A DNA stretch of 51,216 nucleotides from Octopus bimaculoides (taxonomy: Eukaryota), in assembly GCF_001194135.2 (NCBI RefSeq), contig NC_068986.1, positions 33,386,837 through 33,438,052 on the forward strand, in the 5' to 3' direction. Positions 10,468 through 11,012 of the stretch are shown here, piece by piece. Positions within the stretch are counted from its first letter, which is position 1, and every line of letters begins with the position of its first letter. The translations under genes and the position numbers were made by a program. The notes under the pieces were generated by a model that saw nothing but the letters and a program-made list of their open reading frames with translations, was not told the DNA's origin and did no database searches.

Positions 10468-11012
10468 TGGGAAAGATAACTTCCCTTGGCAAATACAGTC
10501 AGGACACAGATGTGTGTCGATAGCCAGCTGGAGGAGATGTCCTCCTGGGGCTAAAAGCAACAGTAACATCCACCCCTCGGGGTCAGCCACATTTAAGTGG
10601 CAAATATACTTCACTTTATCGTGCAGTTACTGTTAATACCTCGTTCAGAGATTTAACATTGCTTGTTTTCACTTTTTGGATATCAGTGAATAATTTCACT
10701 GGAAAAAGTTATATATATTTGCCAAGGCATGTCTTTTGCATCGAAGGTCGGCGATTGTCGTACGCTGAAGAAGGGAAATAACCCTGAAACTCAAGTACGT
10801 ACGTATCGTAGATCAAGATGGGAAAGATAACTTCCCTTGGCAAATACAGACAGGACACAGATGTGTGTCGATAGCCAGCTGGAGGAGATGTCCTCCTGGG
10901 GCTAAAAGCAACAGTAACATCCACCCCTCAGGGTCAGCCACATTTAAGTGGCAAATATACTTCACTTTATCGTGCAGTTACTGTTAATACCTCGTTCAGA
11001 GATTTAACATTG
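10468..11012 (+). mobile_element. Retrozyme-like / Penelope pseudo-LTR-like non-coding element: 351-bp unit in about 1.55 tandem copies, containing a hammerhead ribozyme
   Basis: 10468-10661 and 10819-11012 are 194-bp direct repeats with 2 substitutions (period 351). The 157-bp intervening part carries a core-perfect type I HHR. Confidence 0.7.
10752..10808 (+). ncRNA. Type I hammerhead ribozyme
   Basis: Stem I CGUACG (10759-64) pairs with CGUACG (10798-803), extended by CGAU/AUCG across an internal loop. Core CUGAAGA (10765-71). Stem II AGGG-aaauaa-CCCU. GAAA (10786-89). Stem III A-U plus C-G with a UCAA loop. GUA cleavage triplet, predicted cut after 10797. Confidence 0.85.

What the first reader, a model, noticed from the sequence alone, without database searches (positions are those of the whole stretch)
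10468..11012. Candidate cephalopod retrozyme: 351-nt non-coding tandem unit carrying a hammerhead ribozyme
Seen: two 194-bp direct repeats (2 mismatches) exactly 351 bp apart, no coding capacity, and a core-perfect type I HHR near the end of the first full unit. Established: non-LTR retrozymes of metazoans and Penelope pseudo-LTRs (work of Cervera and de la Pena) are short tandem or partial-tandem units with one HHR per monomer. Retrozyme monomers self-cleave, circularise into small circRNAs and are thought to be copied by a partner RT. Inference: this is a 1.55-copy insertion of such a family, recent given the 99% repeat identity. It predicts a 351-nt circular RNA joined at 10797/10798. I cannot tell whether this family has been described in cephalopods.
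Basis: partly seen in the sequence, partly recalled or inferred. Interest (0 to 1): 0.9.

Follow-up and report, generated by a model that had tools for sequence, protein, structure and literature searches.

The report
Truncated octopus hammerhead retrozyme-like repeat
This is a 548-bp, one-and-a-half-unit copy of a short non-coding, strongly folded octopus repeat that carries one well-formed self-cleaving hammerhead ribozyme; it is a probable new, cephalopod member of the known "retrozyme" mobile elements, and this copy has too few ribozymes to make a circular RNA itself.

Summary
Window 10468-10664 and 10819-11015 are direct repeats 351 bp apart, with 3 mismatches in 197. The non-repeated 154 bp between them carries a complete type I hammerhead (10751-10809), predicted to cleave after A10797. 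The motif is unique in the window under my descriptor. It was matched by 0 of 400 simulated windows at the observed stringency. It is also the top hit (23.7 bits, E about 2e-4) of a covariance model built only from four published, experimentally cleaving retrozyme hammerheads. Rfam's own hammerhead models do not report it.

The 351-nt unit has 42% GC and no coding signal. It folds far better than shuffles (z = -6.6).

The window is octopod DNA. A 20.7-kb piece of Octopus vulgaris fetched for another reason contains a diverged copy of the repeated module (E = 2.6e-12). That copy has compensatory stem changes and the same 3' end. The family is therefore dispersed, old and abundant, not a local duplication.

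The locus has one ribozyme only, so as assembled it cannot release a 351-nt circle. No tandem array, second hammerhead-bearing copy, cleavage or circular RNA could be tested.

Verdict: new member of a known kind, moderate interest.

The parts
10468..10664 (+). Module A, copy 1. This is the upstream, 5'-truncated unit, about 197 nt. It contains the conserved hairpins 10503-10518 and 10521-10553.
   Evidence: It is a direct repeat of 10819-11015 at spacing 351, with 3 mismatches. It is homologous to O. vulgaris L001 715-520 on the minus strand. The hairpins are predicted with z about -4, and the same architecture is predicted in L001.
10665..10818 (+). Module B, the non-repeated 154 nt of the 351-nt unit. 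It carries the hammerhead and a 12-nt stretch (10716-10727) that is perfectly complementary to module A (10484-10495 and 10835-10846).
   Evidence: Sequence. The 12/12 inverted match appears in the self-BLAST. The pairing forms the long closing helix in the predicted fold of the monomer.
10751..10809 (+). Type I hammerhead ribozyme. It comprises helix I (proximal 10759-10764/10798-10803 and distal 10751-10755/10805-10809, with a 3x1 internal loop), CUGAAGA 10765-10771, helix II 10772-10775/10782-10785 with the loop AAAUAA, GAAA 10786-10789, and a 2-bp helix III with the UCAA tetraloop. The predicted cut is after A10797.
   Evidence: It is the only descriptor hit in the window, and 0 of 400 simulations match it at the observed stringency. 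It is the top hit of covariance model R1, built from four published retrozyme hammerheads: 23.7 bits, E about 2e-4. It meets the published filter CUGANGA/GAAAY/RUH. Rfam does not report it.
10819..11015 (+). Module A, copy 2, the 3' part of the full unit 10665-11013. Its end marks the 3' terminus of the insertion.
   Evidence: It is a direct repeat of copy 1. Similarity to the unit stops at 11010-11015. The homology in the independent O. vulgaris copy ends at the same unit position, within about 5 nt.

Best explanation
The locus is a 1.56-unit head-to-tail insertion of a 351-nt non-coding, highly structured retroelement unit of octopods that carries a type I hammerhead ribozyme. It is a retrozyme-like element of the metazoan non-LTR kind, which recent work links to Penelope-like elements.

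Proposed mechanism, with the basis for each step:
1. Longer, multi-unit master copies are transcribed (inferred).
2. Each hammerhead cuts after GUA, corresponding to A10797 (inferred from the motif).
3. The cut releases a 351-nt monomer. Its ends are held together by helix I and its roughly 27-bp imperfect extension. This is a predicted structure.
4. A host RNA ligase circularises the monomer. This step comes from the literature model, not from this sequence.
5. A partner reverse transcriptase, from a Penelope-like element or a LINE, starts at a fixed site at the end of the conserved, structured module A. It runs more than once round the circle, or along a multimer. This is inferred from two independent copies that share one 3' end and from the more-than-one-unit length.
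6. The resulting cDNA has a fixed 3' end and a variable 5' end.

The window copy is such a product. It has only one ribozyme, so it is a dead-end offspring copy. A transcript through it would be cut once, at 10797/10798.
For: - The repeat geometry and the hammerhead anatomy are confirmed.
- The hammerhead is statistically unusual. It is the best match in 76 kb to a covariance model built only from the coral, mussel and axolotl retrozyme hammerheads that cleave in vitro.
- Its architecture equals that described for invertebrate retrozyme hammerheads: helix II of 4 bp with a 6-nt loop, a helix I internal loop after 6 bp, and a 2-bp helix III with a tetraloop.
- Unit length (351 nt) and GC (42%) fit the published ranges of 150-450 bp and below 45-50%. 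The mussel units are 350-390 bp.
- The circular monomer folds at -120 kcal/mol against -80 +/- 6 for shuffles, z = -6.6.
- A 12-bp perfect complement ties module B to module A.
- An independent diverged copy lies in O. vulgaris (nhmmer E = 2.6e-12). It shows two double-sided compensatory changes in a 6-bp stem: GGAGGA/UCCUCC against GGAGAC/GUCUCC. It ends at the same unit position.
- One hit in a random 20.7 kb of a 2.8-Gb genome implies thousands of copies.
- Penelope-like elements are annotated in O. vulgaris.
Against: - Rfam's curated hammerhead models give no hit, even at E <= 10 on 91 nt.
- The 10.1-11.1 pair is A-U rather than the usual G-C. It could weaken catalysis, although the axolotl U.U variant still cleaves.
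- The locus has only one hammerhead and only 1.56 units. No array was seen.
- There is no other copy in the 40.8 kb of the window.
- The O. vulgaris copy securely covers only module A. Homology into the hammerhead 3' half has p = 0.005 with a post-hoc anchor and p = 0.13 without it. The 5' half of the hammerhead is absent there.
- No clear target-site duplication is visible in the AT-rich flanks.
- Nothing was found in the metagenome, viral or prokaryote collections, which do not hold cephalopod DNA.
Confidence: 0.6

Rival explanations
1. The element is a linear, SINE-like or mini-Penelope-like non-autonomous retroelement with the order B-A: start near 10665, end near 11013. It inserts as a partial tandem, a 5'-truncated copy followed by a full copy, as Penelope-like elements do. 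Its hammerhead is either a relic or trims read-through transcripts. No circular RNA stage is involved.
For: - Two independent copies share a 3' end.
- The arrangement [A][B-A] is formally the pseudo-LTR layout described for Penelope-like elements.
- The O. vulgaris copy looks like a 5'-truncated copy that retains only the 3' module.
- A 2026 preprint argues that animal retrozymes derive from Penelope-like pseudo-LTRs.
- Penelope-like elements exist in Octopus.
Against: - In Penelope-like elements the hammerhead sits inside the repeated pseudo-LTR near the 3' end. Here it lies in the non-repeated part, 216 nt from the 3' end.
- A cut there would split a linear template.
- The monomer defined by the cleavage site folds into a closed structure whose two ends pair in helix I. 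That suits ligation.
- There is no RT or GIY-YIG coding sequence at the locus.
Confidence: 0.17
2. Module A is an independent interspersed repeat, for example one of the many unclassified octopus SINEs or a solo-LTR-like unit. The A-B-A layout is then a composite or LTR-like structure. The hammerhead in B would be unrelated to the mobility of A, or a decayed relic.
For: - The O. vulgaris copy securely contains only A.
- A starts with TG and its homology ends at CA in both species.
- A PBS-like TGGATATCAGTG lies at 10677-10688.
- O. vulgaris has 893 unclassified SINE families among its recently active elements.
Against: - The repeat runs 6-7 nt past the CA.
- There is no flanking target-site duplication.
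- The PBS-like motif lies 18 nt from the end of A rather than 0-5 nt.
- B and A share a 12-bp perfect complement within a long helix, so they behave as one RNA.
- Two 99%-identical same-orientation copies 154 bp apart are not expected from independent insertions.
- The hammerhead would cut only once, which fits no known LTR-retrozyme logic.
Confidence: 0.13
3. The repeat is a local segmental duplication or an assembly artefact in a draft scaffold, and the hammerhead-like motif arose by chance.
For: - The window is a gap-rich draft with 22 runs of N.
- Helix I is built from a (GTAC)n-like palindrome.
- Rfam is silent.
- Two other hits near 19.6 bits in the window show that the model's threshold region is populated.
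Against: - The locus lies in a gap-free 4.8-kb contig, 9159-13925.
- The copies differ at 3 sites.
- 1.56 copies is not what a simple tandem duplication gives.
- The chance expectation for the motif is 0.02 or less per window, and it falls inside the 1.3% of the window occupied by the repeat.
- The repeat module exists in another species at a non-syntenic site.
Confidence: 0.1

Closest known systems
Metazoan non-LTR retrozymes (Cervera and de la Pena 2020, PMC7229834), especially the Mytilus galloprovincialis 350-390-bp family
   Same: - A non-coding unit of about 350 nt with low GC in a mollusc.
- A type I hammerhead with a 4-bp helix II and a 2-bp helix III with a tetraloop. Mussel: GAAAC-GCGC-GUC. 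Here: GAAAC-UCAA-GUA.
- A monomer predicted to be highly self-paired.
- A head-to-tail arrangement.
   Different: - Only 1.56 units and one hammerhead are present here, whereas the published families form dimers to large multimers.
- There is no sequence similarity to the mussel unit.
- The 10.1-11.1 pair is A-U.
- Circular RNA and cleavage are untested.
- A fixed 3' end with a conserved 3' module has not been described for retrozymes in the papers read. They state that no conserved motif pointing to the partner element is known.
Axolotl retrozyme Rtz_353 / HHR_Amex2 (PMC7229834)
   Same: - A unit of about 350 bp.
- The cleavage triplet GUA.
- A 2-bp helix III with a tetraloop.
- A non-G:C pair at the base of helix II.
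   Different: - It is a vertebrate family with about 60,000 motifs in long arrays.
- The base of helix II is U.U there and A-U here.
- The sequences are unrelated.
Penelope-like element pseudo-LTRs with hammerheads (PMC4209133, PMC8557442) and the proposal that retrozymes derive from them (bioRxiv 10.64898/2026.07.22.740005)
   Same: - The partial-tandem layout, a 5'-truncated copy upstream of a full copy.
- A type I hammerhead.
- Penelope-like elements co-occur in Octopus genomes.
   Different: - There is no RT or GIY-YIG ORF.
- The hammerhead lies outside the repeated part.
- The hammerhead is canonical, with an extended helix I and a loop on helix II, rather than the minimal Penelope-type variant.
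Schistosoma Sm-alpha and newt satellite 2 hammerhead repeats
   Same: - Roughly 330-nt repeated units that carry a type I hammerhead.
- The helix I internal loop and the 6-nt loop 2 geometry match. This point rests on my own knowledge of the Schistosoma ribozyme.
   Different: - The phyla differ and the sequences are unrelated.
- Those families are proven to cleave and are present in high-copy arrays.

Membership tests
Hammerhead ribozyme, type I | Conserved catalytic core CUGANGA / GAAAY / RUH, the filter used by Cervera and de la Pena | tested here: met
   The core reads CUGAAGA (10765-10771), GAAAC (10786-10790) and GUA (10795-10797). The criterion is quoted.
Hammerhead ribozyme, type I | Three helices around the core, with helix I open and helices II and III closed by loops | tested here: met
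   Helix I has 6 + 5 bp, helix II 4 bp and helix III 2 bp. Helices I and II also appear in the minimum-free-energy folds, with z between -3.1 and -3.9.
Hammerhead ribozyme, type I | Match to the curated Rfam hammerhead covariance models | tested here: not met
   There is no hammerhead hit at the gathering score on the window. There is none at E <= 10 on 901 nt or 91 nt.
Hammerhead ribozyme, type I | Match to a covariance model of experimentally cleaving retrozyme hammerheads | tested here: met
   Model R1 was built from coral Amil224, mussel Mg353 and axolotl Ax353 and Ax330. The candidate is the top hit, at 23.7 bits and E about 2e-4 over 76 kb. The result is the same with filters off. The calibration is rough, and the next hits score 19.7 and 19.6 bits.
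Hammerhead ribozyme, type I | Loop 1 to loop 2 tertiary contacts | tested here: inconclusive
   The geometry is right: an internal loop UGU/U after 6 bp of helix I, and a 6-nt loop AAAUAA on a 4-bp helix II. The specific interacting nucleotides could not be checked against a reference. Mussel retrozyme hammerheads also lack most of them.
Hammerhead ribozyme, type I | Self-cleavage at the predicted site | not testable with these tools
   This needs in vitro transcription of about 10700-10830.
Metazoan non-LTR retrozyme | Short tandem units (150-450 bp), each with one type I hammerhead, from dimers upward | tested here: inconclusive
   The period is 351, but only 1.56 units and one hammerhead are present. 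Short-read collapse of a longer array cannot be excluded. Monomeric derivatives are described for vertebrate families.
Metazoan non-LTR retrozyme | Non-coding, GC below 45-50%, and no LTR, PBS or PPT | tested here: met
   GC is 42%. There is no ORF above 71 aa and there are no protein relatives. No canonical PBS lies adjacent to the repeat end.
Metazoan non-LTR retrozyme | Monomer predicted to be a stable, highly self-paired RNA | tested here: met
   The circular minimum free energy is -120 kcal/mol, with z = -6.6 against 200 dinucleotide shuffles. Same-length flanking controls give -43 to -90 kcal/mol.
Metazoan non-LTR retrozyme | Multi-copy family dispersed in the genome, with the hammerhead conserved | tested here: inconclusive
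   One diverged copy of module A was found in 20.7 kb of O. vulgaris. Its hammerhead 5' half is missing and its 3' half is only suggestive. There is no other copy in the window. Cephalopod genomes are not searchable with these tools.
Metazoan non-LTR retrozyme | Expressed as unit-length circular RNA | not testable with these tools
   This needs RNA data: RNase R treatment, a northern blot or divergent RT-PCR.
Metazoan non-LTR retrozyme | Co-occurrence with Penelope-like elements in the host genome | tested here: met
   This rests on the literature only. Penelope-like elements are one of six TE orders annotated in O. vulgaris, with 31 recently active families. None is present in the window.
Penelope-like element (pseudo-LTR) | ORF encoding RT and a GIY-YIG endonuclease between the repeats | tested here: not met
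   Only 154 nt lie between the repeats, with no ORF and no protein homologue.
Penelope-like element (pseudo-LTR) | Hammerhead located within the repeated pseudo-LTR | tested here: not met
   The hammerhead (10751-10809) lies wholly in the non-repeated part, 10665-10818. The expected location is stated.
Plant-type LTR retrozyme | Type III hammerhead inside each LTR, a tRNA-Met PBS, a PPT and a 4-bp TSD | tested here: not met
   The hammerhead is type I and lies outside the repeats. The PBS-like TGGATATCAGTG is 18 nt from the repeat end. There is no TSD.

The most novel reading that the evidence does not exclude
This is the first cephalopod retrozyme family. Unlike described metazoan retrozymes, it would have a conserved, covarying 3' RNA module and a fixed cDNA start site. 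That would give a direct handle on which reverse transcriptase copies retrozyme circles and how it is primed. Together with two further hammerhead-like motifs in the same 51 kb, it would also mean that ribozyme-bearing retroelements are a sizeable, so far unannotated, fraction of octopus repeats.
Probability: 0.3. Interest if true: 0.55.

Novelty: new member of a known kind. Interest (0 to 1): 0.38.

Why it matters
Retrozymes are known from corals, mussels, insects and amphibians. In the literature I could search, none is described for cephalopods. The latest detailed Octopus vulgaris repeat annotation mentions no ribozymes.

If the family is confirmed, three things follow:
- Part of the "unclassified SINE" or unknown repeat fraction of octopus genomes could be reclassified.
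- A class of abundant small circular RNAs would be predicted in a lineage studied for unusual RNA biology.
- The shared 3' end and the covarying 3' hairpins offer a testable clue to the long-open question of which reverse transcriptase mobilises animal retrozymes, and from what priming site.

If only this locus carries the ribozyme, it is a curiosity of no wider consequence.

Tried and rejected
- **Rfam.** I scanned the whole window at the gathering score, and 901 nt and 91 nt at E <= 10. There was no hammerhead or other ribozyme hit. I keep this as evidence against, but it is outweighed by the descriptor test and by the model built from published retrozyme hammerheads.
- **Looking for more copies.** All of these were empty:
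  - Self-BLAST and nhmmer of the window.
  - A protein search with the 71-aa pseudo-ORF and with a six-frame concatenate of the unit.
  - Exact look-ups of the 50-aa and 40-aa pseudo-ORFs.
  - Exact-pattern scans of the metagenome, viral and prokaryote genome collections with the hammerhead 26-mer, a 22-mer and the interspecies-conserved hairpin pattern.
  These collections do not hold cephalopod DNA, so the negatives say little.
- **Exact look-ups of two large window ORFs** to find the source assembly. Neither is on record.
- **Contigs L002 and L003** (GCA_052426985.1). No similarity to the unit.
- **LTR-retrozyme reading** (TG...CA ends, a PBS-like TGGATATCAGTG, a solo-LTR in O. vulgaris). 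Rejected because the repeat runs past the CA, the PBS-like motif is 18 nt away, there is no TSD, and the hammerhead is not in the repeats.
- **tRNA-derived SINE head.** ARAGORN finds no tRNA-like sequence in the window.
- **Extending the O. vulgaris homology into module B.** The apparent GCATGT..TTGCAT match is not better than shuffles (p = 0.51). AATAACCCAGAAA is partly (AAT)n microsatellite, so I treat the hammerhead 3' half there as suggestive only.
- **MAFFT alignment of the three A copies**. It misplaces indels, so I did not use it for pair counts. I compared independently folded hairpins instead.

Full report
**1. The observation**

Window 10468-10664 and 10819-11015 are direct repeats whose starts are 351 bp apart. 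They differ at 10499/10850, 10579/10930 and 10662/11013, and similarity ends at 10664/11015. Tandem Repeats Finder does not list it.

The locus sits in a gap-free stretch, 9159-13925, of a draft scaffold with 22 runs of N. The longest ORF over the locus is 71 aa. Neither that ORF nor a six-frame concatenate of the unit has any relative among 5.8 billion proteins.

**2. The ribozyme**

The 154 non-repeated bases (10665-10818) contain a complete type I hammerhead:
- Distal helix I: GCGAU 10751-10755 with AUCGU 10805-10809.
- Internal loop: UGU against U10804.
- Proximal helix I: CGUACG 10759-10764 with CGUACG 10798-10803.
- Core: CUGAAGA 10765-10771.
- Helix II: AGGG/CCCU with the loop AAAUAA.
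- GAAA: 10786-10789.
- Helix III: A-U and C-G, closed by UCAA.
- Cleavage triplet: GUA, with the cut after A10797.

Several tests support it.
- It satisfies the published filter CUGANGA/GAAAY/RUH.
- A descriptor search finds it and nothing else on either strand of the window.
- In 400 Markov-1 simulations of the 40.8 kb of real sequence, a loose descriptor gave 0.0225 hits per window. None reached the observed helix lengths.
- The repeat occupies 1.3% of the window, so chance co-location is of the order of 3e-4. This figure is my inference.

As an independent test, I took the four retrozyme constructs whose cleavage was shown experimentally: coral Amil224, mussel Mg353, and axolotl Ax353 and Ax330. 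Their sequences are in Supplementary Table 2 of PMC7229834. I aligned only their hammerheads and built a covariance model without the octopus sequence. I then searched the window and three fetched loci. The candidate is the top hit at 23.7 bits, E about 2e-4.

Its 2-bp helix III with a tetraloop is what the paper calls typical of invertebrate hammerheads. The mussel reads GAAAC-GCGC-GUC and the axolotl Ax353 reads GAAAC-ACGU-GUA.

Two points count against it. Rfam's own hammerhead models report nothing, even at E <= 10 on a 91-nt slice. The 10.1-11.1 pair is A-U instead of the usual G-C. However, the axolotl HHR_Amex2, with U.U at that position, still cleaves: 22% per hour as a monomer and efficiently as a dimer.

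**3. The unit as an RNA**

The 351-nt unit has 42% GC, against 35% for the window. Permuted to start at the cleavage site and folded as a circle, it gives -120 kcal/mol. Dinucleotide shuffles give -80 +/- 6 (z = -6.6, 0 of 200 as good). Flanking controls of the same length give -43 to -90.

Helix I continues into a long imperfect helix. That helix includes a perfect 12-bp complement between module A (10484-10495, also 10835-10846) and module B (10716-10727). The expected number of such a match in 351 nt is about 0.004, which is my inference. A and B therefore behave as one RNA, with the hammerhead's helices II and III as terminal hairpins of a closed, branched molecule. This is the published picture of retrozyme circles.

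**4. Host and relatives**

A LINE reverse-transcriptase fragment in the window (34359-35180, minus strand) has as its best hit an Octopus vulgaris protein, at 70% amino-acid identity. The window is therefore octopod DNA. The species is not fixed.

Fetching the gene for that protein brought in L001, 20.7 kb of O. vulgaris chromosome OX597821.1. Unexpectedly, L001 contains a diverged copy of the unit:
- BLASTN gives 83% identity over 77 nt.
- nhmmer gives E = 2.6e-12, aligning L001 757-520 (minus strand) to window 10777-11008.
- The two loci are not syntenic. Their other matches are a LINE and SINE-like repeats in different order.

Three things follow from this copy.

First, the family is not single-copy. 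Finding a copy in a random 20.7 kb of a 2.8-Gb genome (size) implies at least about 7,000 copies of the module, as a one-sided 95% bound. This is my inference from one observation, in a repeat-rich place.

Second, the structured part of module A is kept through compensatory change. The inner stem GGAGGA/UCCUCC (10530-10535 with 10540-10545) reads GGAGAC/GUCUCC in L001. That is two double-sided changes and no disruption, inside the same nested-hairpin architecture. The z-scores are -4.0 and -3.7.

Third, homology in L001 stops at ...GAGATTTACA. This is the same unit position at which the window's second copy stops...GAGATTTAACATTG at 11010-11013. For random ends the chance of agreement within 5 nt is about 3%, which is my inference.

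There is a limit to what L001 shows. Upstream of module A, L001 reads CCCA-GAAA-U-CGCA-A-UA|C. That could be a hammerhead 3' half with a compensatory U-A in helix III. The support is p = 0.005 with that anchor and p = 0.13 without it. The 5' half is replaced by an (AAT)n microsatellite, and nothing beyond it matches module B (p = 0.51). L001 therefore proves module A to be a dispersed, conserved repeat. It does not prove that other copies carry a hammerhead.

**5. What the locus is**

The two ends of the insertion, the fixed 3' end and the total length of 1.56 units fit a cDNA made from a circular or multimeric template. That cDNA would start at a defined site at the end of module A and end at an arbitrary 5' point.

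[quoted passage not shown] It is also formally the partial-tandem layout of Penelope-like elements. A 2026 preprint argues that the two are related, and Penelope-like elements are annotated in O. vulgaris.

The 3' end lies 216 nt downstream of the cleavage site. A hammerhead-processed linear monomer primed at its own 3' end cannot therefore have been the template.

The hammerhead is not in the repeated part, so this locus has one ribozyme. The next cleavage site would be at 11148, beyond the truncation. As assembled, a transcript would be cut once and no 351-nt circle could be released.

The copy is best seen as a dead-end offspring, of the kind called monomer derivatives in vertebrates. The exception would be if a longer array was collapsed by the short-read assembly, which preserves the phase. 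The true locus could then be 2.56 or more units.

**6. Rivals**

- A linear B-A element of SINE or mini-Penelope type, without a circular stage, remains possible (0.17).
- Module A as an independent repeat, with an LTR-like A-B-A composite, is disfavoured (0.13). The reasons are the A-B complementarity, the absence of a TSD, the misplaced PBS-like motif, and the repeat running past the CA.
- A chance motif in a local duplication or misassembly is unlikely, given sections 2 and 4 (0.1).

**7. Novelty and score**

Retrozymes in molluscs are known from the mussel, with 350-390-bp units. Full-text searches found no paper that links hammerheads or retrozymes to cephalopods, beyond a statement about Naiad Penelope-like remnants. 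The 2026 O. vulgaris repeat annotation does not mention ribozymes.

This is a probable new member of a known kind. The shared 3' end and the covarying 3' module are a modest new angle on the unknown partner reverse transcriptase. The kind is established, this copy is defective, and family-level hammerhead conservation, cleavage and circular RNA all remain untested.

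Noticed in passing
window 32685-32924 (hammerhead-like motif at 32821-32882 +, mirror copy 32727-32788 -): This is a 108-nt-arm, 99% complementary inverted repeat that abuts the N gap 32467-32684. Its right arm holds a second hammerhead-like motif: AUUCCA-CUGAUGA-...-GAAA-UCCAGGAU-U|UGGAAU. It scores 19.7 bits, E about 0.003, has a complete core and a 6-bp helix I, and shows an A.A mismatch at the base of helix II. 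The left-arm copy has U4 changed to G (14.4 bits). The head-to-head layout recalls inverted Penelope-like copies.
   Followed up: partly
window 50792-50827 (-): A third hammerhead-like motif lies here: CUGAUGA-GCCA-UGUAA-UGGC-GAAAC-UAUAA-GUU (19.6 bits, E about 0.003). The core, helix II (G-C at its base) and helix III are perfect, but there is no helix I partner and the upstream sequence is A-rich. It is probably a relic of another ribozyme-bearing family.
   Followed up: partly
L001 7582-7921 (O. vulgaris): A 169-nt-arm, 99% complementary inverted repeat has a weak (10 bits) CUGAAGA...GAAA motif in each arm. This is again a hammerhead-like core in a head-to-head arrangement.
   Followed up: no
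L001 757-840 (minus strand): An (AAT)n microsatellite sits exactly where helix II and loop 2 (AAAUAA) of the hammerhead would lie in the O. vulgaris copy. It may have been seeded by the loop sequence and then destroyed the ribozyme's 5' half.
   Followed up: partly
window 10255-10450 and 11535-11573; window 45804-45954 vs L001 994-1143: SINE-like repeats flank the locus, and the insertion lies just after the A/T-rich tail of one of them. Another SINE-like element in the window is 84% identical to one in O. vulgaris.
   Followed up: no
window 34359-35483 (-): A LINE reverse-transcriptase C-terminal fragment (273-aa ORF) is 85% identical in DNA to a copy in O. vulgaris, which is annotated there as a jockey-type RT. 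It has no Pfam hit.
   Followed up: partly
window 5667-6110 (-) and 19966-20244 (-): One ORF has Tc1/mariner-like helix-turn-helix matches and runs into low-complexity sequence. A separate 92-aa ORF has C2H2 zinc-finger matches. All of these matches are below the Pfam cut-offs.
   Followed up: no
window 10677-10688: TGGATATCAGTG resembles an initiator-tRNA-Met primer-binding site. It lies 18 nt after the CA at the end of module A, too far for a canonical PBS. The overlapping 14-mer CTTTTTGGATATCA also occurs in L001 at 19-32.
   Followed up: partly
whole window: The window is a draft-quality scaffold. It has 22 N runs totalling 10,405 bases, mostly bordered by (TA)n or (CA)n microsatellites. 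Array lengths of any tandem repeat here are therefore unreliable.
   Followed up: no
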